Assembly (NCBI RefSeq): GCF_964213995.1
Contig: NW_027590164.1
Span: 248,001-312,000, forward strand
Source: Mustelus asterias
Taxonomy: Eukaryota
Length of the DNA stretch: 64,000 nucleotides
Direction of reading: 5' to 3'
The translations under genes were made by a program, and so were the position numbers. Below, piece after piece: positions 20,433 to 62,018 of the stretch (its first letter is position 1; each line of letters begins with the position of its first letter). The notes beneath the pieces are model-generated. The model did not search any database and was not told the DNA's origin. It saw only the letters and a program-made list of their open reading frames with translations.

Positions 20433-20569
20433 TTGGAATCTCCTTTTACAGATGGTTAGAAGAAGAGGATTTTTACAGCAATCTCAAACCCCAAAAAATG
20501 TGTATTTCTTAATTTCAAGCCACAATTGACACATGACTCTTGTAATCTCCTTTTGCAGGGAGTTAGAAT

Positions 20570-22826
20570 ATTTGCACTTGACGGTCCGTGAGGGGGGCGT
20601 GGTCATTCACTTGCTGAACGTCTACACCCCAACCGCCGGACCGCAGCAAATGACTTTCTATGAGAAAGTGTCCGCTCATCTCGACACCATTGCGGGGGGT
20701 GAATGCATTATCCTCGGGGGAGATTTCAACTGTACCCTCGAGGCACGGGACCGCACCGGCCCCTCGCTGCGCACCCCGGTGATGGTGAAGTTGCGGGACC
20801 TGCTCGGGTCCCACGACTTGGTGGACATTTGGAGACATCTCCATCCTGGCTCCAGAGCTTTCAGTTACGTGAGGCCTGGAGTCGGAGCGTCCAGGCTCGA
20901 CCGCCTTTACATTTCGAGGGCGAACGTGTCCGGCGTGTCTTCGGCTCCATGCGGCTGGTGTCGTGCACGGACCACAACCTGATGTGGGCGGACTTTGTGC
21001 CGTCTCGTGTCCGGCGGGGGTCCGCGTACTGGCACTTTAACAACAAGCTGCTGGAGGACGAGCGCTTCCTGGACTTGTTCCGTCGATTCTGGGCCGGCTG
21101 GAGAAGGAAGCGGGGAGGCTTCCTCTCCTTGAGGCTCTGGTGGGATGTGGGCAAGACTCACGTCCGTACCTTCTGTCAGGAGTACGCAAGGGGGTCGACA
21201 AAGGGACGGAAATCCAGGCTCGAGGAGTTGGAGAAGGAGGCACGTCTCAGTCAGCCCGACGCGGACCCGGCCCTGTGTTCGGAGTACAGGGAAAAGAAGG
21301 TGGTGAGGTCGCGGCTCCAGTTCCAGGTGGACCTGGACCGCGGCTCCCCCTTCTTCTACTCGCTGGAAAGAGGGCGGGCTAACCGTCAGCAGCTCCTTAC
21401 GCTGCTGGCCGACGACGGTTCCCCCGTCTCGGATCCCGAGGGCATCCGGGCCATTGCCCGGGATGATTACACCTCCCTCTTCTCTCCGGATCCGTCCAGC
21501 GAGGATTCCCGCAGACCTCTGTGGGAGGACCTGCCGCAGGTCAGCCCGGAGGGCGTCGGCAGGCTTGAAGCCCCCACCACCATGGCCGAGCTGACCGGCG
21601 CCCTCAATGGCCTCAGTCGGGGCAAGGCCCCGGGGCTGGACGGGCTGACAGTAGAGTTCTCCTGGGGAGCGACTACGCGGGGGTCCTGGGGGAGAGCGTC
21701 GCTACCGGGGAGATGCCCCTTTTGTGGCGCAGGGCCATCATTGCCCTGCTGCCCAACAAGTGGGATCTATGCCTCCTAAAAAACTGGCGCTCGGCCTCCT
21801 TCCTCAGCACGGATTATACAATCTTTGCCAAGGCTATTGCTTCATGCCTTGGATCCGTGCTGGACCACATGATCCACCCTGACCAGTCCTACACGGTCCC
21901 GGGCCGTTGTATACACGATAACCTCCAACTGGTCCGGGACCTAATCGGGGACGTGCTCGATGGCGGAGGGGCGGGCTGGATGAGTCCCCGCGTGCTGGCT
22001 GAGCGCGTGGGGACGACCGTCCGGCGCGCGGCCAAAGCCATCCTAGACCTTAGGACGGTCGTGCTCGGCCCCGAAAATATAAACTCGAGGCGGCGCAGGC
22101 GTGCGGTGGGATCCCGCCCGAGCGTTCCCCTGTTCGGGCGGAATTCCACAGTGGCCCAAATCCTCAACCCCCCTCCCTGGGTGAGGTGCCCCACAGCCTG
22201 AGCCGCCTCGCGGAAATGCCCTCCGTGCCTTTTTCTCCCGCGCGGATGCGTTTCCTGTGCGGGCTGCTGCTGCACACCCTCCACTACCGCCTCCTCGCCT
22301 GTCGCCCGGATACACCTTGGCGGGCCTTGTTGCCACCGGGCGGCGGAGGTCCCTGCTGGAGGTCCCTCTATGGAGGGATCTCCCCCAATTACGTCGGGGA
22401 CCTGGGGTGGAGGGTGATGCATGCAGCAGTTCCGCACAACCGTAGGATTCACTGGTTCACGGGCTCCGAAGACTGCCCTTTCTGTGGCCTTGCAGAGTCC
22501 GTGGACCATGTCTATGTTGTGTGTCTTAGGCTGCACTCCCTTTTTGTTTCCCTAAAGAACCTTTTAATGATGTTTTGTTTGCACTTCAGTCCCACGCTCC
22601 TGATCTACAGACACCCGGTGCGGATATAACGCACCCCAACCCCTGGGCATTGCAGGGGTTGGGGTGTGTTATTGACCCTGATAATCACATTTTAATTTGA
22701 TGTTTTAAGTTTCCTTTGTACTTTGATTTCTGTTCGGGCTGTTCCCCCTCCTTTTGGGGAGCTGCCCCTTTTACTTTGTCCTGACTTAATTTGAGTTTGT
22801 TTAATTGGTTTGACCTAAAAAGGGGT
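20570..22826 (+). mobile_element. Tx1-clade non-LTR retrotransposon, 5'-truncated with internal deletions
   Basis: APE motifs LNVY, GGDFNC, SRLDRLY, TDH; WHFNNKLL and LRLWWDVGK; RT start GKAPGLDGL, HPDQSYTVPGR; C-terminal CPFCG..ESVDH..C; ORF2 ends IDPDNHILI* at about 22700; short 3' UTR with a GC stem-loop. Confidence 0.92.
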
Positions 22827-22985
22827 CCAACATCTTTGAGTAAAACACTTTCTTTTCAACCCCTTTTCCATTTCTTTTCTCATTCTGGGGGAAATTGGGG
22901 ACTTGCAGCAACTGGAGGGAAAGGAAGTGAATCCAGGGAGGGTGCAGACTCTGGAAAGGTTGGTCCAGGTTTCTCTCTCTCTTAA
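22827..22985 (+). other. ZNF-family exon-1 donor and intron-1 start (donor mutated to TTGAGT)
   Basis: Collinear with the 46587-46430 (-), 59320-59212 (-) and 61231-61310 (+) copies. Confidence 0.85.
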
Positions 22986-22994
22986 ACCAGAAAA

Positions 22995-24757: not shown

Positions 24758-25768
24758 ATGGAGAGACCATGGAAATGTGTGGACTGTGGGAAGGGATACA
24801 GAACCCCATCAGAGCTGGAAGCTCATCGGCGCAGTCACACTGGGGAGAGGCCGTTCATCTGCTCTCAGTGTGAGAAGGGGTTTAATCAGTTATCCAGCTT
24901 ACGGGCACACCAACGAGTTCACACTGGGGAGAGACCATTCACCTGCTCTCAGTGTGGGAAAGGATTCACTCAGTCATCCAACCTGCGGACACACGAACGG
25001 GTTCACACAGGGGAGAGGCCGTTCACTTGCTCTCAATGTGGGAAGGGATTCACTCGATTATCCGACCTGCAGATACACCAGCGAGTTCACACTGGGGAGA
25101 AACCATTCACCTGCTCTCAATGTGGGAAGGGATTCATTCAGTTATCAGACTTGCAGAGACACCAGCGAGTTCACACTGGAGAGAGGCCGTTCACCTGTTC
25201 TCAGTGTAGGAAGGGATTCGCTCGATTATCCGAACTGCGGACACACCAGCGAGTTCACACTGGGGAGAAACCATTCACGTGCTCTCAGTGTGGGAAGGGA
25301 TTCACTGTGTCATCCGACCTGCAGAGACACCAACGAGTTCACACAGGGGAGAAGCCGTTCATTTGCTCTCAGTGTGGGAAGGGATTCACTCAGTTATCCA
25401 ACCTGCAGACACACTAGCGAGTTCACACTGGGGAGAAACCATTCACCTGCTCTCAGTGTGGGAAGGGATTCAGTCGGTCAACCCACCTGCGGACACACCA
25501 GCGAGTTCACACTGGGGAGAGGCCCTTCACCTGCTCTCAGTGTGGGAAGGGTTTCAGCGTTTCATCCCAGCTGCTGAGACACCAGCGAGCTCACACTGGG
25601 GAGAAACCATTCACCTGCTCTCAGTGTGGAAAAGGATTCACTCAGTTATCCAACCTGCGGACACACCAGAGAGTTCACACTGGGGAGAGGCCGTTCACCT
25701 GCTCTCAGTGTGGGAAGGGATTCACTCGGTTAACCCACCTGCGGATACACCAGCAAGTTCACGAGTGA
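24758..25768 (+). pseudogene. C2H2 ZNF gene 2: 12 fingers with a premature TAG in finger 8
   Basis: Acceptor 24407, ATG 24758 (MERPWKC), CAG->TAG at 25415-25417, frame continues to TGA 25768. Could still encode a 7-finger protein. Confidence 0.88.
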
Positions 25769-25996: not shown

Positions 25997-27045
25997 CAGA
26001 GGTTGGCAGTGCAAAGGTACATTTCTGAATGGAGGGCTGTGACAAATGACGTTCCTCAGGGATCAGTGCTGGGACTTTTGCTGTTTGTAATATATATAAA
26101 TGATTTGGAGGAAAATGTAACTGGTTTGATTGGTAAGTTTGTGGACGACACAAAGGTTGGTGGAATTGCGGATAGCGATGGGGACCGGCAGAGGATACAG
26201 CAGGATATAGATCAGTTGGAGACTTGGGCGGAGAGATGGCAGATGAAGTTTAATCCGGACAAATGTGAGGTAATGCATTTTGGAAGGTCTAATACAGATG
26301 GGAAATATACAGTAAATGGCAGAACCCTTAAGAGTATTCATAGGCAGAGGGATCGAGGTGTACAGGTACACAGGTCATTGAAAGTGGCAATGCAGGTGGA
26401 GAAGATAATCAAGAAGGCATACGGCATGCTTGCCTTCATCGGCCGGGGCATTGAGTTTAAAAATTGGCAAGTCATGTTGCAGCTTTATTGAACCTTTGTT
26501 GGACCGCACTTGGAATCAATTCTGGTCACCACACTACCAGAAGAATGTGGAGGCTTTGGAGAGGGTACGGAAAATATTTATTTGGATGTTGCCTGGTGTG
26601 GAGGGCATTAGCTATGAGGAGAGGTTGGAGAAACTTGGTTTGTTCTCACTGGAACGACGGAGGTTGAGGGGGGCGACCTGATAGAAGTCTACAAGATTAT
26701 GAGGGGCATGGACAGAGTGGATAATCTGAAGCTTTTTCCCAGGGTGGAAGAGTCAATTACTGGGGGCATAGGTTTAAGGTGCGAGGGGCAAGGTTTAAAG
26801 GAGATGTACAAGGCAGGTTTTTTACACAGAGGGTGGTGGGTGCCAGGAACCCGTTGCTGGGGAAGGTAGTGGAAGCAGATAAGATAGTGACTTTTGAGAT
26901 GTGTCTTGACAAATATATGAATAGCATAGGAATAGAGGGATATGGTCCCCGGAAGGGTAGGGGGTTTTAGTTCAGACGGGCAGCATGGTTGCTGCAGGCT
27001 TGGAGGGCCAAAGGGCTTGTTTCTGTGCTGTAATTTTCTTTGTTC
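25997..27045 (+). mobile_element. CR1 3' fragment inserted in copy A only
   Basis: VPQGSVLG, KFVDD, FFTQRVV. Absent at the equivalent site gatatttagtcagcatttctg at 30138 and 51742. Confidence 0.9.
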
Positions 27046-34700: not shown

Positions 34701-35363
34701 CAAATGGGATGTTGGCCTATATCGCAAGGGGGATAGAATATAAAAGCAGAGATGTCTTGCTGCATCTGTACAGGGCATTGGTGAGGCTGCAGCTGGAATA
34801 CTGTGTTCAGTATTGGTCCCCTTATTTGCGGAAGGATATATTGGCCTTGGAGGGAGTGCAGAGAAGGTTCACCAGGTTGATACCAGAGATGAGGGGTGTT
34901 GATTATGAGGAGAGACAGAGCAGATTGGGTTTGTACTTGTTGGAATTTAGAAGGCTGAGGGGGGATCTTATAGAGACCTATAAGATAATGAAGGGGCTGG
35001 ATAGGGTAGAGATGGAGAGATTCTTTCCACTTAGAAAGGAAACTAGAACTAGAGGGCACAGCCTCAAAATAAAGGGGGGTCAGTTTAGGACAGAGTTGAG
35101 GAGGAACTTCTTCTCTCAGAGGGTGGTGAATCTCTGGAATTCTCTGCCCACTGAAGTGGTGGAGGCTACCTCGTTGAATATGTTTAAATCACGGAGAGAT
35201 GGATTCCTGATCGGTAAGGGAATTAGGGGTTATAGGGATCAGGCGGGTAAGTGGAACTGATCCACTTCAGATCAGCCATGATCTTATTGAATGGCGGGGC
35301 AGGCTCGAGGGGCTAGATGGCCTACTCCTGCTCCTATTTCTTATGTTCTTCTGTTCTTATGTT
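31785..35363 (+). mobile_element. Near full-length CR1 LINE: SGNH-esterase ORF1 (partial) and APE-RT ORF2, inactivated
   Basis: VIGDS...VIHVGAND (ORF1); LNAR, AITETW, VYRPP, GDF, SDH, QGSVLGP, FADD (ORF2). Stop at 32150, frameshifts near 32660, 33585 and 34240; ttcttatg tail. Confidence 0.96.
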
Positions 35364-44316: not shown

Positions 44317-45075
44317 TCACTCATGAACTTGGTGGTGTCTCAGCAGCTGGGATGAAACTATGAATCCCTTCCCACACTGAGAGCAGGTGAATGGCCTCTC
44401 CCCAGTGTGAACTCGCTGGTGCTTCCGCAGGTTGGACAACTGACTGAATCCCTTCCCACACTGAGAGCAGGTGAATGGTCTCTCCCCAGTGTGAACTCGC
44501 TGGTGTGTCTGCAGGGTGGACAACTGACTGAATCCCTTCCCACACTGAGAGCATGTTAAAGGCTTCTCCCCAGTGTGAACTCGCTCATGTGTCCGCAGGT
44601 GGGATAATTGAGTGAATCCCTTCCCACACTGAGAGCAGGTGAATGGTCTCTCCCCAGTGTGAACTCGCTGGTGTCTCCTCATGCGGGAAGATTCACTGAA
44701 TCCCTTCCCACACTGAGAGCAGGTGAACGGCCTCTCCCCAGTGTGAACTCGCTGGTGTGCCCACAGGTTGGATGAATGAGTGAATCCCTTCCCACACTGA
44801 GAGCAGGTGAATGGTCTCTCCCCAGTGTGAACTCGCTGGTGTGCCCGCAGGTTGGATGAATGAGTGAATCCCTTCCCACACTGAGAGCAGGTGAACGGCC
44901 TCTCCCCAGTGTGAACTCGCTGGTGTGTCCGCAGCTCGGATAACTGACTGAATCCCTTCCCACATTGAGAGCAGGTGAATGGCCTCTCTCCAGTGTGACT
45001 GCGCCAATGAACTTCCAGTTCTGATGGGTATCTGTATCTCTTCCCACAGGCCCCACATTTCCATGGTTTCTCCAT
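44317..45075 (-). CDS. C2H2 ZNF gene 4, 9 tandem fingers, intact (252 aa)
   Basis: ATG 45075 (MEKPWKC) to TGA 44317; acceptor at 45411-45409; exon-1 donor GTGAGT at 46578-46573; no KRAB or SCAN-like domain. Confidence 0.9.
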
Positions 45076-46572
45076 GGTGCAGTGTCCTTGCCTCTCTCTT
45101 TGGTGGACAATCAGTTGAAGCCTCGTTAACACACACACAACACGAGTGCAGTCTCTCCCCACTGTTAATAGTGTGATCTGTATTCAGCTCTTTAGTCAAT
45201 GCACTTGAACACTCTCATTTGATTGTGGCAGTGTGTTGGTCCTTTTCCAGTCAAACTGACATTTAAAATCCTTTCAAATCGACAGACCAGACAATCATTT
45301 CTCCTTCTAGATTCAAAAGCTGATGATATTCAGGTCCCAAGGAATATGACTCTGTCAGATCTAGATGTGACGATTGAGATTTCTGCATGTGATTCCTCTT
45401 TCAATATCCTGTAAAACAAGTTTGCAAACGTCATCACTGTCAGTACAGGATAGAAATTCAGAACAGACAGTTCTAGTTTCTATGGAACATTCTTTCCTCT
45501 CTCATTCCCCAAAAGCTGTAAATCTCCATCCCACACAATCTCCCTCCATTCTCACTCTGCTGTATCTAATATTCACCCTCCCAATTCTCCTGAAGGTGCT
45601 GATTGAGGCTGATTGGCAGATCCATGCTCACTGCTTCCTGTCCTGGACACAGAGACCATAACAAATAGGAGCTGCAGTCGGCCACTTGGCCTATCATGCC
45701 TTTTAAACCATTCCGGGAGATCGTTGGCTCATCTACCTCAGCATCATTCTCCCCACACTAAACCCATCTCCCTTGATTTCTTCAATATCTAGAAACCAAT
45801 CTCTCTCTCCTGAAAATTCTTGATGACTGAGGCTCCACAGGCCGCCAGGCTAGAGAATTCCAAAGCTTCACCACATCCTTGAATCAGGAAATCCCTCGTC
45901 ATCTTAGCTTTCTCTCCATTTCCCCATATGTTCCCCATAAGCCTTGACAGTCTTGTCAGTCAAAAATCAGTCTAACTCATCCTGGAATATATTTAATGAT
46001 TCTCAACCTGCAATGATCCCTGTGGAAAGGAAATTCAAGAATAACAATTGCCTGTGAAGATGACTGGAAATATATAACGTAGCTACGTTTCTATATTACA
46101 AGACTATAAATAATAATAAATGTATATTATTTCAGAGTCATAAATAATATATCTAATCTATATCATATAACAACACTCGACATGTCTCTATCCTATATTA
46201 ATTTACTGTCCCCTTAAATGTCAGTAAGAAGTCTCACAACACCAGGTTAAAGTCCAACAGGTTTATTTGGCAGCAAAAGCCACACAAGCTTTCGGAGCGC
46301 TGCTCCTTCGTAATGTCAGCCATCGCCTGGGGAAACAAACCCTTTAATTGTGAACATTAGGAAAGAGACCATCCTTTTAGCCAGACAAATAAATGTCTCA
46401 AGCTGAGGGAGCAAAGGATGTCAATGTCTTTAAGAGAGAGAGAGACCTGGGCCAACCTGTCTAGAGTCTGCAGCCTCCCTGGATTCACTTCCTTTCCCTT
46501 CAGTTGCTGCAAGTCCCCTATTTCCCCCAGAATGAGAAAAGAAATGGAAAGGGGGAGAAAAGAAAGTGTTTT

Positions 46573-46587
46573 ACTCACAGATGGTAG
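46573..46587 (-). other. Unoccupied ZNF exon-1 donor site (CTACCATCT|GTGAGT)
   Basis: Exon sequence cagactgaaacttcctcctgtct runs directly into intron gtgagtaaaacactttc. Confidence 0.85.
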
Positions 46588-46619
46588 AGACAGGAGGAAG
46601 TTTCAGTCTGTCTGAAGCT

Positions 46620-47100
46620 CAATCTGCATTAACATAAAGCCTGCGCTCTGATTGGCTGGAGGACCAGCGTCGTTCCGGTCCTCCAACTCTTCCCATTGGC
46701 CAATACCTTAGAGTGAAGGTCAGGGGGTGGGATCTCCGCCGCGCGGACCCGGGAGCCCCGCCCCCACCCATTGTTCCCCCTCCCCCTGCACCTCCTCGAG
46801 CCAAGGTTTCCAGGCAACCGGCTGATGGCTCCGGCCAGAGCGAGAAGCCACTCGGTGATCGCCCCCTCCCCCTCCCCCCCCGGCCCGGGATTGCGCATGT
46901 CCAAGGGAGAGGGGACGCTGCGCATGTGCGGGGGAACCCATCCCCTGACCGGCATACTGAGGTATTGACCAATGGAAAAGAGTGGAGGACCGGACGTTCT
47001 CTGGTCCTCCAGCCAATCACGTTTCCTCCATTGTGTGAATGCGGAAGTTGGCCGATGAGCTTCAGACCAAAACCCCCTTCTCCGTCCAACATCTGGGAGG
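46620..47100. promoter_or_regulatory. Palindromic bidirectional promoter between ZNF4 (-) and ZNF5 (+)
   Basis: Arms at about 46645-46730 and 46935-47020 are inverted copies, each with two CCAAT boxes and TGGAGGACC-N11-GGTCCTCCA; central TGCGCATG (NRF1-like) sites; GCGGAAG. Confidence 0.8.
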
Positions 47101-49460
47101 AAATCCAAAGGTGTTCTTTCATCATGTGAAGGGCAGGAGGTGACCAGGGAAAGAATAGGGTCCATTCGGGAGCAATGTGGTAATTTGTACATGGAGCTGG
47201 GAGATATTGGTGGGGTTTTAAATTAATACTTTGCATCTGTATTCACTGTGGGGGTGGGTGATGTAGGTATAGAAAGCACAGTAAGAAGTCTCACAACACC
47301 AGGTTAAAGTCCAACAGGTTTATTTGGAATCACGAGCTTTTGGCTGCTTGTTTGAGACTGCACCTTCATCAGGTGAGTCGTATAGAGTATAGATACCAGG
47401 GAGCAGCTTTGTGATTCACTTCAACAACTTCACATCGAGAGGGAGGAGGTATTAATGGTTTGAACTGGGCCTAAAATTATATAAATCCCCAGCTCCAGAT
47501 GAGGTGTGTCACAGACTGCTGTGGGAGGCAAGAGAGGAGATTGCAGCCACTCTGACAATAATTTTCAAATCTTCTTTGGCCACAGGAAAGGTCGTACAAC
47601 ACCAGGTGAAAGTCCAACCGGTTTATTTGGGAACACAAGCCATTCGCTTTCAGAGCACTGCCCCTTCAGCAGACGAGTGGGAGTTCATCAGGGTGAGTTG
47701 TGAGACTTCTTACTATGTTTACCCCAGTCCAATGCCGGCATCTCCACATCACAGGAGAGGTGCCACAGGAGTGGAGGACAGCTGATGTGGTACCATTAGT
47801 CAAGAAGGGACATAGGGAAAAAACCAGCAAATTACAGGCCAGTGAGTCCAACTTCAGCAGTAGGGAAACTATTGGAAAAACTTCTGAGGGACAGATTACT
47901 TTCCACTTGGGGAGGTAAGGATTAATCAAGGATAGTCAACATGATTTTGGCAAAGGGAGATCAAGTATTACAAATTTGGTTGAACTTTCGAGATGAGGAG
48001 GTGTGTAGATGAGGGGAGTGCAGTTGATGTAGTGGACATGAACTTCAGTAAGGCTTTTGACAAGGTTCCGCATGGGAGGCTGATGAAGAAGATAAGAGCC
48101 CACGGGATCCAGTGTAATTTGCCAAACTGGATCCAAAAGTGGCACGAGTCAGAGGGGGATGGTCGAATGCTGTTTTTCTGATGAGCTGTCTGTGTCCAGT
48201 GGTGTTCCGCAGGGATTAGTGCTGGGTCCCTTGTTTTTAGTGTAAGTTAATGATCTGGATGAGAATGTAGGAGGTATGATCAGTAGGTTTGCAGATGGCA
48301 CAAAATTGGTGATGTGGTAAATATCAAAGGGCAAAGCCTTAGATTAGAGGATGATATCGACGGGGTGGCACTGCTGCATCACACAACCAGAGACCTGGGT
48401 TTGATTCCCGGTTTGGGTCACTCTCTCTCTCTTTCTTCCCATGTCTGCTTGGTTTCCTCTGGATTCTCCGGTTTCCTCCCACAATCCGAAAGACGTGCTT
48501 TAGGTTTGGTGCATTGGCTATGCTAAATTCTCCCTCAGTGTTCCCGAACAGGTGCAACTAGGGGAATTTTCACAGTGACTTCATTGCAGTGTTAATGTTA
48601 GCCTACTTGTGACACTAATAAATAAACTTTAAAACTTTGGTGAGAAGGGCACAACAGTGGCAAAAGGAATTCAGACCTGAAAAGTTTGAGGTAATGCATT
48701 TTGGGAAGACTAACAAGGTAATGCACAATAAATGGTCAGATCCGAGGAAGTACAGAGGATCAGAGGGACCTTGGTGTGCATGTCATAGATCTCTGAAGAC
48801 AGCAGGACAGGGACACAATGTGGTTGAGAAGGCACATGGGATACTTGCCTTTATTAACCGAGGCATTGAATATAAGGGCAGGGAGGTTATGATGGAGCTG
48901 TATAAAACACTGGATAGGCCACAGCTGGAGTACTGTGTGCAGTTCTGGTCACCACACTATAGGAAGGATGTAATTGCACTGGAGAAGGTGCAGAGGAGAT
49001 TCCCCAGGGTGTTGGCTGGGCTGGAGTGTTACAGTTATCAAGAGAGACTGGATAAGCTGGCATTGTTTTTCTTGGAGCAGAGAACGATGAAGGGGGCCTT
49101 ATTGAGGTGTATAAAATTCTGAGGGGCACAGATAGGGGGGATAGGAAGGAACTTTTTCCTTCAGCAGAGGGGTCAATAACCAGGGGCATGGATTAAAGCT
49201 CAGGGGCAGGAGGATTATAGGAGATGTGAGGGAAAATGTTTTCACCCAGAGGGCGGTGGGAATCTGGAACTCAGTGCCTGAAAGGGTGGTAGAGGTGGGA
49301 ATCATCATAACATTTAAGAAGAATTTAGATAAGCTCTTGAAATGCCATAGCATACAAGGTTACGCACCAAGTGTGGAAAGGGATGAGAATAGAATGGTGC
49401 TTGATGGCTGGCACAAACACGATGGGCTGAAGGGCCTCTTTCCATGCTGTAAAACTCTAT
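47100..49460 (+). mobile_element. Decayed CR1 LINE with nested Penelope pLTR pieces (47277-47380, 47590-47750) and a SINE (48362-48633)
   Basis: FSKAFDKVPH, EYCVQFWSP and FTQRAV motifs, interrupted by the nested repeats. Confidence 0.88.
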
Positions 49461-50016: not shown

Positions 50017-53000
50017 GTCCAGGACAGGAAGCAGAGAGCATGAATCTGTCAGTCAGCCTCAATCAGCACCTTCAGGAGAATTGGGAGGGTGTTTATTAGA
50101 TACAGCAGAGTGAGAATGGAGGGAGAGTGTGTGGGATGGAGATTCACAGCTTTTGGGGAATGAGAGAGGAAAGAATGTTCCATAGGAACTTGAATTATCT
50201 GTTCTGAATTTCTATCCTGTACTGACACTGATGACTTTTTCAAACTCATTTACAGGTTATCAGAAGGTGAGGATTTACAGAATGAAATTTTGAAACAAAC
50301 GTCACATTAACATCTGACAGTCACTCAATTGATCGGGACCTCAATATCATCGATCTTTGAATCTAGAAGGAGAAATGTTTCTCTGCTCTGCCTGCTTTCG
50401 AAGACTTTAAACATCAGTGTGACTGGAAATGCACCGACACACACACACCTGAGTGAGAGTGTTCCTGTGCACTGAGTGTGGAAAGAGCTTTAACCGGTGA
50501 CATTCACAGCGGGGCGAGACTGTACCCGTGTTCTGTGTGAGATTTAACTGACTGTTTAACCTGGACACTCCCAAGGACACCCGCACCATGGAGAAACCGT
50601 GGAAATGTGGGGACTGTGAGAAGCAATTCAAAGCTCCATCTGATTTGGAAATTCATTGGCGCAGTCACACTGGGGAGAGACCGTTCACCTGCTCTGTGTG
50701 TGGGAAGGGATTCAGTTATCCAACCTGCTGAATCACAAAGTGACTCATACCAAGAAGAGCCCCTTTAAGTGCTCTGATTGTGGGAGTGGATTCAAAAGCT
50801 CTGGAGAACTGGTGTCCCACCAACGCATTCACACTGAGGAGAGACCGTTCAGCTGCTCTCACTGCACAAAGAGATTTCAATGGTCATCCAACCTGAGGTC
50901 ACACCAGCGGGTTCACACTGGGGAGAGGCCATTCACCTGCTCTCAGTGTGGGAAAGGATTCAGTCATTCATCCACCCTGCAGACACACCAGCGAGTTCAC
51001 ACTGGGAAGAGGCCGTTCACCTGCTCTGCATGTGGGAAGGGTTTCACTCGGTTATCATACTTGCAGTCACATCAGCGAGTTCACACTGGGGAGAGGCCAT
51101 TCACCTGCTCTCAGTGTGAGAAGGGATTCATTGCATTATCCAGCCTGCAGAGACACCAGCGACTTCACAGTGGGGAGAAACCGTTCATCTGCTCTGAGTG
51201 TGGGGAGGGATTTACTCAGTTATCCAACCTACAGACACACCAGCGAGTTCACACTGGGGAGAAACCATTCACCTGCTCTCAGTGTGGGAAGGGATTCACT
51301 CAATTGTCCAGCCTGCAAACACACCAGCGAGTTCACACTGGGGAGAGGCCGTTCATTTGCTCTCAGTGTGAGAAAGGATTCACTGACTCATCCGGCCTGC
51401 AGAGACACCAGCGCATTCACACTGGGGAAAGGCCATTCACCTGCTCCCAGTGTGGGAAAGGATTTAGAGTTTCATCCCAGCTGCTGAAACACCAACAAGT
51501 TCACGAGTGATTCCAGGGGTTGGATTCTGCTGTTATTGTTTCTGCTCTCAATTACATCCAGGACTGCATTTTATTCATTCTCACAGTTGGTCAATGGGGA
51601 GGGTCGGAGGGTTTCTTTCTGCTGGACTGGCCGGTCTCACAACTTTGTCTCCAGTGGGCTGATGCTCTTTGAGTCTTGTTTCGAATACCTGGTTTCAAAT
51701 TTCACACGGATCACAGAGTGACAGGGTGTGAGGAAGTTCAGAGATATTTAGTCAGCATTTCTGTTTGAAACTCCCCCAGATGCCCATCCAATTTCCTTTG
51801 CAATTGTTTATTGTCTCCATTTCTTCCACCCTTGTAGGCAGCGAGTTCCAGGTCATTACCATTCGCTGCATCAAAATATTCTCCCTCACATCCTCTCCTG
51901 CATCTCTGACCCAAAACCTTAAATCTGTGTCCCCCCTCGTCCTTGTCCTATCAGCTAATGGGAACAGCTTTTCTTTGTCCACCTTATCTAAACCTGTCAG
52001 AATCTTGTCCACCTCTATCAAATCTACCCTCAACCTCCTTTGCTCCAAGGGAACAACTCCAGCCTGACATCGACAATAAAGAACAAAGTAACAGAATATG
52101 TTAATACCTGAAATCAAATGTTTAATTTCTGTTTTAAAGATATTGAGAATATATTGTCCTGGACAATAAAGGAATTGGGATAACTCCGGTAAATGAACAC
52201 AAAAAGATGCTGGAATCTGAAACAAAAACAGAAAATGGTGGAAAATCTCGGCAGATCTGACAGCATCTGTGGAGAGAGAATCGAGCTAACATTTCGAGTT
52301 TTCTCGACTGCTGAGATTTTATGCATCTATTTTATTTTATAATTGAGGATTTATAGGAACCAGTTAAATGTGGAAATTTTAAGCCTGGACGCATTTGGAA
52401 TAACTGAGAATTTTATCGTGTTGTCACCTCAACTCCAGATAAAGAACAAAGATTTTGCAGGTGGTAACGTGTTTGGTATTTTAAAGCAACAAAGACTAGA
52501 TGTTGCCTATAAAATCAGGCCCAGGAAGTTGGCTTAAAAAAGGTTGTTAGAATGAAGGATCTTGTATCTTATTTCAATCAAGGAGTTGTGAGCTTGTAGT
52601 GCTCTGCCACTTTAAGAAGCTATAGCTCTGAGAGAGAATGCTGAGGATTCATTGTTTGAAATTTACGAGCTGTGAGAATCTGTGTGTTTTGTTTGTTTTG
52701 TGTGGATGTTTGTAGATGTGTTTTATCATTGTTTTGGGCTACATTTGTTAAGGTTCATCTTTCTGGGGAATTAACCTCACCTTGTGTCTTTAATTAAAGG
52801 CATTTCTGGAAGTTTAAAAACAGAACCACAAAAATGCTTGATGCTTCTGGTTATTGTTGTTGTAAAGAACATGCTAAGTTTCTCTGCTTGTGTATGTATG
52901 ATATTTGTGAATTGCTTCAAGCTTTGAGGTTTTCTGTCTGTGATTTAATTCAAACAGATTTTTTTTTAAACTGTAATTAATAAAGCTTTTTTTTCACATT

Positions 53001-57117: not shown

Positions 57118-58128
57118 TCACTTGTGAACTTGCTGGTGTGTCCGCAGGCTAGATGACTGAGTGAATCCCTTCCCACACACACAGCAAGTGAACGGTCTCT
57201 CCCCAGTGTGAACTCGCTGGTGTATCCGCAGGTGGGATGACGTTCTAAATCTCTTTGTGCAGTGAGAGCAGCTGAACGGTCTGTCCTCAGTGTGAATGCG
57301 CTGGTGAATCATCAGTTCCCGAGAGCTTTTGAAATCACTTCCACAGTCAGAACATTTAAATGGTCTCTCATTGGTGTGAGTGAGATTGTGGTTCTGCAGG
57401 CTGGATGACTGAGTGAATCCCTTCCCACACACAGAGCAGGTGAACGGTCTTTCCCCAGTGTGAACTCGCTGGTGTATCCGCAGGTGGGATGGCGTTCTAA
57501 ATTTCTTTGCGCAGTGAGAGCAGCTGAACGGTCTCTCCCCAGTGTGAATGCGCTGGTGGATAATCAGTTCCCGAGAGCTTTTGAAACCACTCCCACAGTC
57601 AGAGCATTTAAAGGGTCTCTCATTGCTATGAGTGACTTTGTGTTTTGACAGGTTGGATAACTGCGTAAATCCTTTTCCACACACCAAGCAGGTGAACGGT
57701 CTCTCCCCAGTGTGAATGCGCTGGTGAATCATCAGTTCCCGAGAGGTTTTGAAATCACGCCCACAGTCAGAGCATTTAAAGGGTTTCTCATTGCTGTGAG
57801 TGACTTTGTGTTTCGACAGGTTGGATAACTGCATAAATCCTTTCCCACACACCAAGCAGGTGAATGGTCTCTCTCCAGTGTGAACACGCTGGTGTTTCTG
57901 CAGATCGGGTAAATGAGCGAATCCGTTCCCACACTCAAAGCAGATGAACGCTCTTTCTCCAGTATGAACCAGCTGATGACGCTGCAGATTATATAACCGA
58001 GTGAATCTCTGCCCACACACAGAGCAGGTGAATGGCCTCTCCCCGGTGTGACTGCGTCGATGAATTTCCAGTTTACAGGGAGCTCTGTATCTCTTCCCAC
58101 AGTCCCCACATTTCCACCGTTTCTCCAT
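57118..58128 (-). CDS. C2H2 ZNF gene 6, 12 fingers, intact (336 aa)
   Basis: ATG 58128 (MEKRWKC) to TGA 57118; acceptor 58488-58486; candidate donors at 59311-59306 and 60773-60768. Confidence 0.9.
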   Translation of the reverse strand: MEKRWKCGDCGKRYRAPCKLEIHRRSHTGERPFTCSVCGQRFTRLYNLQRHQLVHTGERAFICFECGNGFAHLPDLQKHQRVHTGERPFTCLVCGKGFMQLSNLSKHKVTHSNEKPFKCSDCGRDFKTSRELMIHQRIHTGERPFTCLVCGKGFTQLSNLSKHKVTHSNERPFKCSDCGSGFKSSRELIIHQRIHTGERPFSCSHCAKKFRTPSHLRIHQRVHTGERPFTCSVCGKGFTQSSSLQNHNLTHTNERPFKCSDCGSDFKSSRELMIHQRIHTEDRPFSCSHCTKRFRTSSHLRIHQRVHTGERPFTCCVCGKGFTQSSSLRTHQQVHK

Positions 58129-58778
58129 GGTGCGGGTGTCCTTGTGACTCTCCAGGTTAAACAATCAGTTAAATCTCACACAGAACACGGGTACAGTCTC
58201 TCCCGCTGTGAATGCTGCGATGTATTTTCAGGCTGTGTAACTGGTTAAAGCTCTTTCCACACTCAGTGCACTGGAACACTCTCACTCGGGTGTATCTGTG
58301 CCTTGGTGCTTTTCCAGTCACATTGATATTAAAGGCCCGTTGATGCAGACAGAACAGAGAAACATTTCTCCTTCCAGATTCAAAGGCTGATAATATTCAG
58401 GTCCGATGAATTGAGTGAGGGTGTCGGATGCTGATGTGATGTTTGTTTCAAGATTTTGGTCTGTCAATCCTCACCTTCTCATATCCTGTAAACGAGTTTG
58501 AAAAATTCATCAATGTCAGCACAGGATAGAAATTCAGAACAGACAATTCTAGTTTCTATGGAACATTCTTCCTCTCTCATTCCCCAAAAGCTGTATATCT
58601 CCATCCCAAACACTCTCCCTCCATTCTCACTCTGCTGTATCTAATATTCACCCTCCCAATTCTCCTGAAGGTGCTGATTGACAGATCCATGCTCACTGCT
58701 TCCTGTCCTGGACACAGAGAGCTGGAAATCTCCATGCTGGCTGCCAGACAGATATATGTCTGTCTGACTGGACTAACA

Positions 58779-59120
58779 AACATAGAAACCCTACAGTGCA
58801 GAAAGAGGCCATTTGGCCCATCGAGTCTGCACCAATCACAATCCCACCCAGGCCATACCCCGATATCTCTACATATTTCCCTGTTAATCCCTCTAACCTA
58901 CACATCTCAGGACACTAAGGGGCATTTTTTAGCATGGCCAATCAACCTAACCCGCACATCTTTGGACTGTGGGAGGAAACCAGAGCACCCGGAGGAAACC
59001 CACACAGACACGAGGAGAATGTGCAAACTCCACACAGACAGTGACCCAAGCCGGGAATCGAACCCAGGTCCCTGGAGCTGTGAAGCAGCAGTGCTAACCA
59101 CTGTGCTACCGTGCCGCCCC
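58779..59120 (-). mobile_element. HE1/V-SINE starting 5 nt after the tRNA-Val 3' end
   Basis: Full-length copy. Confidence 0.9.
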
Positions 59121-59125
59121 ATAAA

Positions 59126-59198
59126 TGTTTCTGCCCGGTTTCGAACCAGGGACCTTTCGCGTGTGAGGCGAACTTGATAACCACTACACTACAATGTG
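59126..59198 (-). pseudogene. tRNA-Val(CAC) pseudogene
   Basis: Val-CAC body, but the 5' acceptor strand is CACATTG instead of GTTTCYG. Confidence 0.85.
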
Positions 59199-59347
59199 TG
59201 GAATGTACAGACTGGATTCACTTCCTTTCCCTTCAGTTGCTGCAAGTTCCCAATTTCCCCCAGAATGAGAAAAGAAATGGAAAGGGGGAGAAAAGAAAGT
59301 GTTTTACTCACAGATGTGGGCCTCTTTTAAGGTAAAAGAAGCGGCTT

Positions 59348-59418
59348 TGCATTGCCCAGGAATCGAACCCATGCCTCCCGCATGACAGGCAAGAATTCTA
59401 CCACTGAACCACCAATGC
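59348..59418 (-). pseudogene. tRNA-Gly(GCC)-derived pseudogene, anticodon now GTC
   Basis: GCATTGGTGGTTCAGTGGTAGAATTC...CTGTCAT...GGTTCGATTCC...CAATGCA; mismatches in the T and acceptor stems. Confidence 0.88.
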
Positions 59419-59533
59419 ACAGGGCAGAGAAAACTGCTCAGTTCTTTCAACCAGTGCTTTCACATGCAAAGAAATGTGATGATTTGCAGCAGCAAATTCA
59501 ATGCTACTAACACACACACAACAACACTGTTGG

Positions 59534-60767
59534 TTTCTTTTTGTTTATTACAAATACGTTAATACAAAACAATTACAAATACACAAAAAACAAATGTGAA
59601 AAAATACATTACCAATGGCTAACGCCATCCATTTATCAGTTACTACCTTCCATTTCGGAAGGGTTCATCGTCAATTACAGTTTTCCAGGGCATTGCCCTC
59701 AAAATACACCTTCATTTACAAATCATAATCTACAAATCTACAAACATTAACACAACACTACAACTGTACACAACAAAAAATAAACACTGAAGCATAAGGG
59801 CACCGTCCCCTGGGTTTGTCCACCTGCCGGGGGATGCAACCCTCCAGTGGTACTCATATCCGGGGGTTACACCTTACGGATGTTCAGCCGGAGGGGGGAA
59901 ATGGGGGAAACCACCCCGCCTACTCAATCCGGAATCCCTTCCGGAATTTCAGCCGGGGCGGTGGGAGAGTCTCTCCAGGGTACTCAGTTCGGGCCTGCCT
60001 TCCCAATTTTTCTCCCGGAGAATAAAATCCCTCTGGTGTTACTATGTCCGGGGCTTCACCACCCAGAACTTTCCCCAAGTGGATGTCACACCCCCCGGGG
60101 GTGACTCCATCCAGGGGGGGATGCCCCCCAGGCCACAATAACGCAAGAAAATAGACGGGGGCCGGAACCACCAACTATCATAACAGGAAAACCACATATT
60201 ACAATAACAAACAATCCATGAACAACCATACAATTGTGAAACATTTCGGAGGCATCGCCTTCCAGAGCTTCGCCCATCAACATTCCACCGTCCGAAGTCG
60301 ACAACGCTCAACTACAGTCCTCCAAAGTCCACCACTCCGGGCCAGAACTTCCAAAATCACACCCATAGGGGCTGCACCGTCTGGGGTCACACCTTCCGCG
60401 GCTGAACCTTCCGAAACCATAGTTCCCAAATGGCTCCTCCCTGGCTTGGGTCTTCCGAGATTGCATCTACCTGGGCCACGCCTTTCAAGGCACAGGAATC
60501 CCAGCGAGAGCAGCATTCAACAAGCCCCAGCCGAAACAAAAAGTTCTTACACAAGTCACGAACCCAAGCACTTGAAACAGAAACTTCACGCCGACCAAGG
60601 CGTTCCTCCCAGCGGCCACATTTCCAAAAGCTCACCGCAAGGCGCGCATTAAGCCCGCCTTGAACTCCTTATCCTCTGCCCGCCCCCTGCCTGGAGCACA
60701 CCATACTGGCCAACACGCAAAGCGAACGGCCAATATGGTGGACTGGCTGGACAATCCAATCTTTCCC
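59534..60767 (-). mobile_element. Probable L1/Tx1-clade 3' fragment (decayed ORF2 end, GT-rich UTR, AATAAACAAAAAGAAA tail)
   Basis: Tail and base composition are seen directly; protein similarity (YGVL..., KCGRWEER..RREVSV) is weak. Confidence 0.5.
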
Positions 60768-60784
60768 ACTCACAGATGTTGGAG

Positions 60785-61105
60785 AGAGGAGGAAGATTGA
60801 ATCTGTCCACTCCCCCAAGGCCCGGGGCTGCGCATGTCCAAGGGAGAGGGGAAGCTGCGCATGTGCGGGGGAGTGCCCATCCACTGACCTTCATTCTGAG
60901 GTGTTGACCAATGGGAACTCTGGAGGACCGGAAGGACTTTGGTCCTCCAGCCAATCAGAGCTCCCCATTGTCTGAATGCGGAAGTTAGACAATGAGCTTG
61001 TTCAGCTGCTCATTCCTGCCCAGCAAAGCTGCTGCTGCTTCTCTCTGAATGGAGATTGAACTTCAGACAGACTCAACCTTCCTCCTGTCTCTAATATCTG
61101 GGAGA
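60785..61105. promoter_or_regulatory. Second copy of the ZNF promoter between ZNF6 (-) and ZNF7 (+); left CCAAT arm missing
   Basis: 60820-61000 aligns to 46883-47062: two TGCGCATG sites, CCAAT at 60908 and 60951, TGGAGGACC-N11-GGTCCTCCA, GCGGAAG. Confidence 0.8.
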
Positions 61106-61109
61106 GTGT

Positions 61110-61182
61110 GGGTCAGTGGCGCAATGGATAACGCGTCTGACTATGGATCAGAAGATTCCAGGTTCGACTCCTGGCTGGCTCG
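61110..61182 (+). tRNA. tRNA-Arg(ACG)-derived copy with anticodon ATG
   Basis: Matches the vertebrate Arg-ACG sequence as I recall it except C4->T and C35->T (ATG at 61143-61145); TTTT at 61214-61217. Confidence 0.9.
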
Positions 61183-62018
61183 ATGTCAATTTGAAAAATA
61201 GTTTGTGAACTCCTTTTGACCTAAAAGAGGCCAACATCTGTGAATAAAACACTTGCTTTGTTCCCCTTTTGCGTTTCTTTTGCATTCTGGGGGAAATTGG
61301 GGACTTGTTGAATTTTTAACTTCCAGGTCACCACTCGCTGCCTAAATAAAAATCCTCCTCACATTCTTCATGTATCTGTAACCAGGTAATACAGTGCATT
61401 ACACACATCATCAGTCTGCTCATTTATGGCCAAATGTAAAACTTTAACGTGGCTGTCAGCTTGAAGATTAATCATGGATCATTTGCACTTCCACAACCCT
61501 CTGAGGCAGCGGGTTCCAGGTAATGACCTTTCTGCACCAAAATAAAATTCTTCCCCACATCCTTCCCTTTCTCCCAATCCAGTTATCCGGTCCCACATAT
61601 GGCACAGATTTTAATTTCTAGTGTGTAGGCCGGTCGTTACACATAGATTTTCAGATCTCTGTGTCCAATATAGAAAGTGGTCAGCATGGATCCATTAATC
61701 AGCCTGAATCAGCACCTTCAATAGACTTGGGAGGTTGTATACTCAGGAGAGCGCAGTGAGAATTGAGGGAGAGTGTGTGGGATGGAGATTGACAGATTTT
61801 GGAGAATGAGAGAGGAAAGAATGTTCCATAGAAACTAGAATTGTCTGTTCTGAATTTCTATCCTGTACTGACAATGATGTCTATTGTAAATTCCTTTCAT
61901 AGATATCAGGAGGTGAGGATTTATAGACAGAAATTTCAAACTAAACATCACATCAAGATTTGACAGTCATTCGATTTATTGGGACCTGAATATCATCGAC
62001 CTTTGAATCTAGAAAAGC

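What the first reader, a model, noticed from the sequence alone, without database searches (positions are those of the whole stretch)
59306..61245. Candidate site-specific retrotransposon system targeting the exon-1 splice donor of a ZNF gene family
Seen: four copies of the motif CCAACATCT|GTGAGT followed by the same intron start occur in the window. One is empty (46573-46587). The other three are each directly preceded by nearly the same tail: TTTGACCTAAAAAGGGGT at the 3' end of the Tx1 element (22809-22826), TTTTACCTTAAAAGAGG (59337-59321, minus) and TTTTGACCTAAAAGAGG (61214-61230). At ZNF6 the insert is bracketed by a 14/15 direct repeat (60768-60782 and 59306-59320), and removing it restores the empty-site exon/intron layout. 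At ZNF7 the bracket is more decayed (61091-61105 vs 61231-61245, 10/15). Established: Tx1-clade families (Keno, Dewa, Kibi, Koshi, Mutsu) are sequence-specific for multicopy targets such as U2, tRNA-array spacers, microsatellites and 5S rDNA. Inference: here the multicopy target is a protein-coding gene family, which I do not know to be described. Caveats: the Tx1 copy has no visible left TSD, and the GGGAG variant at 61091 is shared with 47086-47100, so it predates promoter duplication.
Basis: partly seen in the sequence, partly recalled or inferred. Interest (0 to 1): 0.92.

Follow-up and report, generated by a model that had tools for sequence, protein, structure and literature searches.

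The report
LINE homing to ZNF first-exon junction
Three zinc-finger genes in this shark-like gene cluster each carry a different retro-inserted sequence at exactly the same nucleotide of their first exon-intron boundary, all ending in the same short tail of a Tx1-like jumping gene, which points to a jumping gene that aims at this gene family.

Summary
The 15-mer CCAACATCTGTGAGT occurs 6 times at up to 2 mismatches (0.27 expected). Four copies are followed by the same intron start. Three of these are directly preceded by the tail TTT(T)(G)ACCT(T)AAAAGAGG, and one is empty.

The three inserts differ:
- a 5'-truncated, internally deleted Tx1-like LINE (20560-22826);
- a 1447-bp composite ending in a decayed tRNA plus a T4 run plus a 13-nt tail, flanked by a 14/15 target-site duplication (TSD);
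- a 125-bp full pre-tRNA-like copy plus trailer plus T4 plus a 13-nt tail.

Different cargo with the same junction nucleotide argues for at least three independent events by one LINE machinery, not one duplicated insertion. The two tRNA inserts look like template-switch chimeras, not a SINE.

Public shark-run contigs add one contig bridging tail to target, and one diverged tail joined at the same nucleotide. They also show tails next to other sequence.

First readers of this scan noted the same pattern on at least eight other pieces of this genome. I did not check those notes.

Verdict: a new target class for a known kind of element (target-specific Tx1 LINEs).

The parts
20560..22826 (+). Tx1-like LINE copy. 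It is 5'-truncated inside the endonuclease domain, most of the RT core is deleted, and about 75 C-terminal ORF2 codons are replaced. ORF2 ends near 22699, followed by a 3' UTR of about 127 nt.
   Evidence: Frame-by-frame translation. Exo_endo_phos C-terminal half, E 7.2e-05. RVT_1 N-terminus, E 5.3e-04. A CPFCG..H..C knuckle is visible. Relatives P0001 and P0003 carry the missing C-terminus. Loose ends at 22624 and 22682.
22809..22826 (+). LINE 3' terminal tail TTTGACCTAAAAAGGGGT.
22827..22841 (+). Target 15-mer copy (CCAACATCTTTGAGT) directly after the LINE. The shared intron start follows, to about 22990.
46573..46587 (-). Empty target site: exon-1-like sequence, then the 15-mer (CTACCATCTGTGAGT), then the intron start.
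46588..47085 (.). Bidirectional, partly palindromic ZNF promoter with inverted arms 46649-46737 and 46931-47019. GC 0.61, CpG o/e 0.63.
47086..47100 (+). Variant 15-mer (CCAACATCTGGGAGG) on the other promoter arm. It has no tail and a different downstream sequence.
60768..60782 (-). Left copy of the ZNF6 TSD, an exact 15-mer. It keeps the exon-1 end plus GTGAGT.
59321..60767 (-). ZNF6 insert, 1447 bp, composite. About 1.23 kb is non-coding and ends in AATAAA plus an A-rich stretch. Then come CCAACA, about 100 nt ending in TTTT, an 11-nt leader, a tRNA-like sequence, a trailer ending in TTTT, and the 13-nt tail.
   Evidence: No other copy in the window.
59347..59419 (-). Decayed tRNA. ARAGORN calls it Asp(gtc). 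I read it, from recall, as tRNA-Gly-GCC with CpG decay.
   Evidence: Rfam tRNA 39.6 bits.
59321..59337 (-). TTTT plus ACCTTAAAAGAGG: a T-run followed by the LINE tail.
59306..59320 (-). Right copy of the ZNF6 TSD (CCCACATCTGTGAGT), followed by the intron start.
60783..61090 (.). Second ZNF promoter, between ZNF6 and ZNF7. It is shorter and CpG-depleted (o/e 0.26).
61091..61105 (+). Decayed left repeat at ZNF7 (CTAATATCTGGGAGA), 10/15 against 61231-61245.
61106..61230 (+). ZNF7 insert, 125 bp. A 4-nt leader GTGT, a full tRNA-like sequence (61110-61182), a 31-nt trailer, TTTT (61214-61217), and GACCTAAAAGAGG (61218-61230).
   Evidence: ARAGORN His(atg). Rfam tRNA 58.7 bits. The trailer is not significantly LINE-like: 297 of 2000 shuffles scored as well.
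61231..61245 (+). Right copy of the 15-mer at ZNF7 (CCAACATCTGTGAAT), followed by the intron start.

Best explanation
A Tx1-like (L1-superfamily) LINE family uses target-primed reverse transcription at one preferred sequence: the end of the non-coding first exon of a multicopy C2H2-ZNF gene family.

Reading the junctions, the first nick is on the antisense strand. On the gene strand it lies between ...CTCT and CCAACATCT, nine bases upstream of the GT donor. cDNA synthesis starts on the 3' end of the LINE RNA (...TTTGACCTAAAAGAGG). The second nick lies 15 nt downstream, after GTGAGT. The 15-bp TSD therefore rebuilds the exon end plus donor to the left of the insert. The insert ends up in intron 1 at +6, always in the sense orientation, and could be co-transcribed from the ZNF promoter.

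In two of the three events here, the reverse transcriptase left the LINE RNA after only 13 nt, at its U-run. It continued on a primary RNA polymerase III transcript: a pre-tRNA with a short leader and a trailer ending in U4. This produced pre-tRNA/LINE-tail chimeras. At ZNF6 further sequence lies upstream, from either a second jump or a second, stacked insertion.

Shown: the same junction nucleotide three times, the shared tail, one 15-bp TSD, an empty paralogue, different cargo, and the sense orientation.

Inferred: the nick positions, the U-run microhomology at the switch, co-transcription, exon status, and family-wide specificity.
For: - Motif and tail statistics and their adjacency.
- The ZNF6 TSD is 14/15 and not extendable, and the empty paralogue is 103/108 identical over the 15-mer plus intron start.
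- The cargo differs at the three sites: a LINE with EN, RT and knuckle remnants; a tRNA-like sequence at 39.6 bits in the ZNF6 insert; and one at 58.7 bits in the ZNF7 insert. One ancestral insert is therefore not a simple source.
- Both tRNA parts are followed by a trailer ending in TTTT, immediately before the 13-nt tail. Sequence upstream of the tail is not LINE-like.
- All 3 of 3 tail-bearing sites in the window lie at the target. The window holds only one copy of this LINE family.
- Outside data. The LINE 3' region and the intron start are both multicopy in three organisms' runs: 7116, 1439 and 5631 contigs were laid. X1 record 8 (117 nt) spans 22767-22889 with 0 other letters and 6 gaps. 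One X7 contig carries a diverged tail...TTTGGTTTGACTGTAAGAGG, joined exactly at 22827.
- P0181, from another sample, reads through an empty site.
- The LINE piece scores 137 bits against a medaka protein whose cluster carries NCBI's TX1 name. It scores 28-29 bits against human L1 ORF2p chains.
- Tx1-clade target preference, TSD-sandwiched tandem copies and template-switch additions of small-RNA heads are described in PMC4494074 (passages read).
Against: - The LINE copy has no left TSD, exon 1 or promoter upstream.
- The ZNF7 repeat is only 10/15.
- At ZNF6 the left flank is 36/49 identical to the empty paralogue's exon 1, while the right flank is 103/108. The two flanks therefore have different histories, and the 15-bp repeat could stem from two events joined by recombination.
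- One search also shows one X16 contig whose match stops at 22827 and continues for 255 nt of other sequence.
- One search shows two X1 joints in which the tail (to 22822) is followed by 17 nt that are not the 15-mer and then by LINE position 22350, at depths 56.9 and 31.
- In X1, summed depth at the tail position 22804 exceeds that at target position 22836 (129272 versus 38743). The tool warns that depth cannot be ranked.
- 1324 loose ends and 14478 pieces were not shown.
- There is no RNA evidence that the target is an exon.
- No tree was built for clade placement.
- No further loci could be fetched.
Confidence: 0.65

Rival explanations
1. The LINE has no real sequence specificity. The exon-1 junction is only a local hot spot, for example open promoter-proximal chromatin or a fortuitously good endonuclease motif. 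Most copies of the family lie elsewhere, and the window over-represents the site because it is a ZNF cluster.
For: One search shows an X16 contig with a different flank after 22827. It shows X1 joints in which the tail is followed by non-target sequence, at depths 56.9 and 31. It also shows tail depth above target depth in X1 and X16. Only one LINE copy of this family is in the window.
Against: A chromatin hot spot does not give the same nucleotide three times. A diverged tail variant in another organism joins at the identical nucleotide. Earlier first-reader notes on other pieces of this genome report the same junction. Those notes are unchecked leads, not evidence.
Confidence: 0.17
2. One ancient insertion left the tail next to the 15-mer. 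Segmental duplication and gene conversion in the ZNF cluster spread that junction. Later deletions, insertions and recombination replaced the sequence upstream of the tail in each paralogue.
For: ZNF clusters evolve by tandem duplication. The intron starts are 81-95% alike. The left and right flank histories at ZNF6 disagree (36/49 versus 103/108), which shows recombination or conversion at this very place. On presence or absence alone, one gain plus one loss is more parsimonious than three gains.
Against: Two different tRNA-like sequences, each with its own trailer, stop at a T4 run exactly at the 5' edge of the 13-nt tail. Random replacement would not do that twice. The ZNF6 site has a clean 15-bp TSD, and its closest paralogue is empty. 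The tails differ from each other. The variant tail seen in X7 shows more than one LINE subfamily at the junction.
Confidence: 0.08
3. The tRNA-like sequences are resident genomic tRNA genes or pseudogenes of a mixed tRNA/ZNF cluster. On this reading the 'tail' is a conserved tRNA-gene downstream flank or a ZNF exon-1 variant, not a retroelement end.
For: The window holds two further tRNA-Val-like sequences (6718-6792 and 59124-59193). The T4 runs after both tRNAs look like ordinary Pol III terminators.
Against: The same tail ends a LINE 3' UTR that has no tRNA. The tRNA-Val at 6718 has no such tail downstream. The ZNF6 insert is TSD-flanked. The empty paralogue lacks both the tRNA and the tail. 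Both tRNAs lie sense to the ZNF gene at the same nucleotide.
Confidence: 0.05
4. The short inserts are members of a true tRNA-headed SINE family that shares its tail with the LINE. On this reading they are not one-off chimeras.
For: An earlier first-reader note (s1-893493) reports a 'tRNA-His head + Tx1 tail' of 104 letters at the same kind of site on another piece. ARAGORN also calls the ZNF7 tRNA 'His'.
Against: The window has two different tRNA heads and one copy of each. A T4 terminator lies between head and tail. From general knowledge, that would stop Pol III before the tail is transcribed.
Confidence: 0.05

Closest known systems
Target-specific Tx1-clade LINEs: Xenopus Tx1 in Tx1D, Keno in U2 snRNA genes, Kibi and Koshi in microsatellites, and crocodilian Tx1-Mar in Mariner-N4_AMi. 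Source: PMC4494074, passages read.
   Same: An APE-type LINE of the L1/Tx1 kind with no poly(A) tail at the 3' end. The junction nucleotide recurs, and the TSD is about 15-16 bp (the paper gives a 16-nt TSD for SINEU-3). Insertions are in one orientation. Small-RNA-derived sequences are delivered to the same target. The paper describes tandem copies sandwiching a TSD, which may parallel the ZNF6 composite.
   Different: The target here is the first exon/intron junction of an RNA polymerase II protein-coding gene family, not an snRNA or rRNA gene, microsatellite or transposon. Because the TSD spans the splice donor, the donor is rebuilt. The small-RNA cargo is one-off pre-tRNA chimeras, not a SINE family.
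U6/L1 and other small-RNA/LINE-1 chimeric retrocopies of mammals. Sources: PMC4476161, seen in a search listing only; PMC6789731, start of the abstract only; bioRxiv 10.1101/2025.02.02.635956, passages read.
   Same: A Pol III transcript at the 5' side is fused to a LINE 3' part within one TSD-flanked insertion. The fusion is explained by a template switch or by RNA ligation before reverse transcription.
   Different: In the preprint, the tRNA/L1 chimeras (21 loci) are mostly half tRNAs and antisense. Here the tRNAs are full length, sense, and carry a leader and a U-run trailer. The LINE part is only 13 nt, and delivery is to one specific site.
R1/R2-type rDNA-specific LINEs. PMC1919474 was seen only as the start of its abstract in search listings. 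The R2 passage is in PMC4494074.
   Same: A multicopy host gene serves as a safe target. The element may depend on the target's promoter for transcription.
   Different: The host gene is of a different class, and R2 has a different endonuclease type. No co-transcription is shown here.

Membership tests
Tx1 clade of non-LTR retrotransposons (L1 superfamily) | ORF2 with an N-terminal APE-type endonuclease, an RT domain and a C-terminal zinc knuckle. | tested here: met
   The copy is a remnant, but all three parts are recognisable. Exo_endo_phos C-terminal half: E 7.2e-05, 23.1 bits, just under the 24.5 cut-off. RVT_1 N-terminus: E 5.3e-04, under the cut-off. CPFCG..H..C is visible. Full-length relatives P0019 and P0164 have Exo_endo_phos plus RVT_1 plus zf-RVT.
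Tx1 clade of non-LTR retrotransposons (L1 superfamily) | Placement of the RT/ORF2 inside the Tx1 clade in a phylogeny (for example RTclass1). | tested here: inconclusive
   No tree was built because no labelled reference set was available. As a proxy, the LINE piece scores 137 bits (E 2e-39) against P0164, whose cluster holds an NCBI protein named 'transposon TX1 uncharacterized 149 kDa protein'. It scores 28-29 bits against human L1 ORF2p chains. 19 of the 20 hit clusters looked up carried no informative name.
Target-specific LINE, by the criterion in PMC4494074: more than 20% of flanks are of one sequence type | A large share of all family copies abut the same target sequence. | not testable with these tools
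   In the window, 1 of 1 LINE copy and 3 of 3 tail-bearing inserts lie at the 15-mer. The outside data are mixed: one bridging contig and one variant-tail junction, against one other-flank contig and two non-target joints among the rows shown. The genome itself could not be searched.
Target-specific LINE | Independent insertions at the same nucleotide, with TSDs and empty sites. | tested here: met
   Three junctions at the same nucleotide carry different cargo. One TSD is 14/15. One empty paralogue is in the window, and P0181 adds one more empty site. Caveats: the ZNF7 repeat is 10/15, and the LINE has no left TSD.
Template-switch (or ligation) chimeric retrocopy of the U6/L1 type | A full small Pol III RNA at the 5' side is joined at its own 3' end to a LINE 3' part, in the same orientation, within one TSD. 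| tested here: met
   The ZNF7 insert is a 4-nt leader, a 73-nt tRNA-like sequence, a trailer ending in TTTT, and a 13-nt tail. The ZNF6 insert has a tRNA-like sequence, a 14-nt trailer ending in TTTT, and a 13-nt tail inside a 15-bp TSD. The mechanism itself is inferred.
tRNA-derived SINE with a LINE-matching tail | A family of copies sharing one head, body and tail, transcribed as a unit from the internal promoter. | tested here: not met
   There are two different tRNA heads with one copy each in the window. A T4 run lies between head and tail. Copy number in the genome was not testable.
Spliced first exon of a C2H2-ZNF gene (the claimed target) | A transcribed exon with a used GT donor that splices to the downstream ZNF exon. 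| not testable with these tools
   The layout fits. A CCAAT/GC-rich bidirectional promoter lies upstream. A GTGAGT donor motif is present. There is a conserved intron 3' part ending in TTTACAG, about 0.7 to 3 kb downstream across the five genes. ZNF ORFs follow. No holder of the stretch is on record as RNA.

The most novel reading that the evidence does not exclude
A shark Tx1 lineage has specialised on the genes of the C2H2 zinc-finger family. In other vertebrates, from general knowledge, this gene class supplies transposon repressors. The element cuts nine bases before the first splice donor. Its 15-bp duplication rebuilds the donor, so every insert becomes a sense-oriented passenger of intron 1. 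The insert is harmless to the coding exons and is transcribed from the host promoter. The same enzyme often jumps onto nascent Pol III transcripts at a U-run, so the site also collects new pre-tRNA/LINE-tail fusions. These are the raw material from which SINEs are born.
Probability: 0.4. Interest if true: 0.75.

Novelty: new variant of a known kind. Interest (0 to 1): 0.6.

Why it matters
Target-specific LINEs are known for multicopy RNA genes, microsatellites and other transposons. A family that homes to the 5' exon-intron junction of a protein-coding gene family would add a new class of safe haven. It would also supply a natural example of an APE-type endonuclease with a long, defined recognition site in Pol II genes.

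The donor-rebuilding TSD suggests how such a target can be tolerated. The pre-tRNA chimeras give dated, site-anchored examples of how reverse transcriptases pick up Pol III transcripts.

Three full-text searches found no paper describing a ZNF gene target for Tx1 elements. Repbase, paper supplements and subscription journals were not searchable.

Tried and rejected
- **Fetching more copies of the LINE and the junction.** A protein-guided scan of metagenome contigs with the ORF2 C-terminus gave 245 pattern matches, none confirmed. A 21-nt target/intron pattern gave 0 matches in metagenome contigs and 0 in viral contigs.
- **Protein searches.** The C-terminus gave 3 hits, the 358-aa piece gave 6, and an antisense ORF across the junction gave 1, an empty site. 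The DNA behind them could not be read.
- **Clade naming through cluster names.** Of the 20 clusters looked up, 1 had a TX1-named member, 4 had uninformative names, 1 was named after an unrelated gene, and 14 had no name.
No long ORF. No significant tblastn hit from 180 fetched LINE proteins (lowest E 0.006). No Rfam family: the best was snoZ6 at 19.6 bits against a cut-off of 35. No tandem array. No second copy in the window. Rejected as unsupported; its origin stays unknown.
- **The ZNF7 trailer as a longer LINE 3' UTR piece.** The local alignment was no better than 297 of 2000 shuffles. Rejected.
- **A hidden left TSD or promoter upstream of the LINE.** None was found at up to 3 mismatches, nor by BLAST.
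- **Earlier findings by sequence.** Both look-ups were blank.
- **Dewa and Mutsu targets.** Not found in the two papers I searched for them. They remain recalled.
- **Paper supplements were closed.** The supplementary figures S3-S5 of PMC4494074 on Tx1 targets were not seen, and they may list further target types.


Full report
**Setting.** The window is a cluster of C2H2 zinc-finger (ZNF) genes full of retroelements. ZNF open reading frames lie at 24722-25417 (+), 44317-45162 (-), 50656-51510 (+) and 57118-58164 (-). ZNF homology also runs from about 62.5 kb to the window's end (+). A conserved intron 3' part ending in TTTACAG precedes five of the genes. Only two ZNF promoters are present, at 46588-47085 and 60783-61090. 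Both are bidirectional, and the first has inverted arms. The best named relative of the LINE protein comes from the horn shark Heterodontus francisci, and earlier notes of this scan call the genome a shark.

**The observation.** It is correct in every coordinate I checked.
- The 15-mer has 6 matches at up to 2 mismatches against 0.27 expected.
- At 22827, 46573, 59306 and 61231 it is followed by the same intron start. Identities are 101/108 to 103/108 among the first three, and 69/85 to 71/85 for the 61231 copy.
- At 22827, 59306 and 61231 it is directly preceded by the tail TTT(T)(G)ACCT(T)AAAAGAGG.
- At 46573 exon-1-like sequence runs straight into it.
- The ZNF6 insert (59321-60767, minus strand) is flanked by a 14/15 direct repeat of exactly 15 bp that cannot be extended.
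- The ZNF7 repeat is 10/15.
- The LINE has no left repeat, exon 1 or promoter upstream.

**What the three inserts are.**

(a) 20560-22826 is a remnant of an L1-superfamily LINE. It has the C-terminal half of an APE-type endonuclease, a linker, the first RT motifs, then a deletion, then the C-terminal CPFCG..H..C knuckle. Relatives P0001 and P0003 show that about 75 further codons of ORF2 are missing. In this copy they are replaced by a 20-bp perfect hairpin. ORF2 ends near 22699, and the 3' UTR is about 127 nt.

The 358-aa piece finds 2631 proteins at E up to 0.001 in the representative library. It scores 137 bits against a medaka protein whose cluster carries NCBI's TX1 name, but only 28-29 bits against human L1 ORF2p. 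I therefore call it Tx1-like. No tree was built.

(b) The ZNF7 insert (61106-61230) has four parts:
- a 4-nt leader;
- a complete tRNA-like sequence (Rfam 58.7 bits; ARAGORN 'His atg');
- a 31-nt trailer and TTTT;
- GACCTAAAAGAGG.

(c) The ZNF6 insert ends in the same way: a tRNA-like sequence (39.6 bits; ARAGORN 'Asp gtc'), a 14-nt trailer ending in TTTT, and then ACCTTAAAAGAGG. From recall, the two tRNAs look like tRNA-Arg-ACG and tRNA-Gly-GCC with CpG-to-TpG decay in the anticodon. This was not tested.

The 5' 1.23 kb of the ZNF6 insert has no long ORF, no LINE protein similarity, no Rfam family and no other copy in the window. It ends in AATAAA plus an A-rich stretch. CCAACA follows, then about 100 nt ending in TTTT, and then an 11-nt leader before the tRNA. 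This fits either of two readings. One is a second, stacked insertion into the regenerated target with a 6-nt TSD. The other is a single read-through RNA. I cannot decide between them.

**Independent events or one?** The junction nucleotide is the same in all three, yet the cargo differs. In two cases a different tRNA with its own trailer stops at a T4 run exactly at the 5' edge of the 13-nt tail. Sequence upstream of the tail is not LINE-like: for the ZNF7 trailer, 297 of 2000 shuffles scored as well.

ZNF6 and the gene with the empty site are close paralogues. They are 183/193 identical in the intron 3' part and 103/108 over the 15-mer plus intron start. ZNF7 is about 81-84% identical to all the others. 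One ancient insertion followed by replacement of everything upstream of the tail is therefore far less likely than at least three events.

One complication remains. The ZNF6 left flank is only 36/49 identical to the empty paralogue's exon 1, so a conversion or crossover break lies at the insert. If two filled sites recombined, the 15-bp repeat would stem from two events. That would still mean repeated use of the site.

**Outside the window.** Runs of at least three organisms hold about a third to a half of the sampled words of window:20500-26500. All are Logan contigs, and none is on record as RNA.

I laid 21900-23200 on four runs at 85% likeness. 7116, 1439, 5631 and 169 contigs were laid, so both the LINE 3' region and the intron start are multicopy.

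For the reading:
- X1 record 8 (117 nt) lies on 22767-22889 across the junction, with 0 other letters and 6 gaps.
- One X7 contig carries a diverged LINE end, ...TTTGGTTTGACTGTAAGAGG, joined exactly at 22827.

Against strict specificity:
- One X16 contig stops matching at 22827 and runs on for 255 other letters.
- Two X1 joints put 17 letters that are not the 15-mer between the tail and LINE position 22350, at depths 56.9 and 31.
- Summed depth at the tail exceeds that at the target in X1 and X16. The tool warns against reading depth.
- 1324 loose ends and 14478 pieces were not shown.

One protein from another sample (P0181) reads antisense through an empty site. No further DNA could be fetched.

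**Mechanism.** The junctions fit target-primed reverse transcription.
- The first nick is on the antisense strand at the left edge of the 15-mer, nine bases before the GT donor.
- Priming occurs on the LINE RNA's 3' end.
- The second nick is 15 nt downstream.

The TSD therefore rebuilds the exon end plus GTGAGT on the left, and the insert lies in intron 1 at +6. All three inserts are sense to the ZNF gene, so they could be transcribed from the ZNF promoter.

The LINE has TTT just before GACC. Both chimeras have the Pol III-type U-run at that very place. A switch by microhomology between the nascent cDNA's A-run and the U-tail of a primary Pol III transcript is therefore my inference. RNA ligation before reverse transcription is the known alternative (PMC6789731, start of the abstract seen).

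The last 60 nt or so of this LINE copy can close into a stem that pairs the tail with CCCCUUUU upstream. I give this no weight. It comes from one copy, and the z-score is driven by the hairpin at the deletion.

**Comparison with what is known.** Passages of PMC4494074 state that many Tx1-clade elements show target preference. The named targets are U2 genes, (TC)n and (TTC)n microsatellites, the transposons Tx1D and Mariner-N4_AMi, and LTR elements, with U5, 5S and satellites in a figure legend. The passages also state that SINEU-3 has a 16-nt TSD with tandem copies sandwiching a TSD, and that template switching added snRNA heads.

The present case matches that pattern in its anatomy. What differs is the target, the first exon/intron junction of a protein-coding gene family, together with the donor-rebuilding TSD.

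Mammalian tRNA/L1 chimeras are described as rare (21 loci) and mostly half-length and antisense (preprint 10.1101/2025.02.02.635956, passages read). Here the tRNAs are full length, sense, and carry a leader and trailer.

Three full-text searches found no paper on a ZNF target for Tx1 elements. Repbase, supplements and subscription journals were out of reach.

**Earlier notes of this scan.** First readers noted Tx1 ends at ZNF exon 1 on at least eight other pieces of this genome, and noted tRNA/LINE or tRNA/SINE chimeras elsewhere. None was followed up, and I could not read those stretches. I treat them as leads only. They raised my prior for genome-wide specificity a little, but they are not counted as evidence.

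**Verdict.** Recurrent, independent, same-nucleotide delivery by a Tx1-like LINE machinery is well supported in the window. Family-wide specificity, exon status and clade membership remain open. I class it as a new variant of a known kind.

Noticed in passing
window 58800-59193 (-): A tRNA-Val-like sequence (59124-59193; Rfam 36.8 bits; 91% identical to the tRNA-Val at 6718-6792) is followed after TTTAT by a full SINE (58800-59122). The SINE has more than ten copies in the window. The earlier notes and my recall call it HE1. The whole unit sits in the ZNF6 intron just after the shared intron start. It looks like another pre-tRNA/retroelement chimera.
   Followed up: partly
window 60783-61090 versus 46588-47085: The promoter whose two exon-1 sites are both filled is CpG-depleted (o/e 0.26, GC 0.55). 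The promoter with an empty site is not (o/e 0.63, GC 0.61). This may reflect germline methylation or silencing of the filled promoter. It rests on two promoters only.
   Followed up: no
window 60783-60830 versus 59212-59320: The left and right flanks of the ZNF6 insert have discordant similarity to the closest paralogue, 36/49 versus 103/108. A conversion or crossover break lies at the insert.
   Followed up: partly
window 22624-22682: In this LINE copy a 20-bp perfect hairpin (22627-22672) replaces about 75 ORF2 C-terminal codons that relatives P0001 and P0003 and most run contigs carry.
   Followed up: partly
window 22822 and 22350 (contigs of run X1): High-depth contigs join the LINE tail, 17 other letters, and LINE position 22350, at depths 56.9 and 31. 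This looks like an amplified arrangement of LINE ends that is not the ZNF junction.
   Followed up: no
window 11691-13573 (-), 26003-26491 (+), 32648-35260 (+): Three further RT- or EN-bearing LINE remnants of other families lie in the window. tblastn with the Tx1-like pieces found no match to them.
   Followed up: no
window 47086-47300: The GGGAGG-type exon-1 arm is followed by a different sequence and then a SINE. Four contigs of run X16 put a similar GGAAGG variant directly before position 22860 of the intron start. This suggests a second version of the exon-1/intron junction in the family.
   Followed up: no
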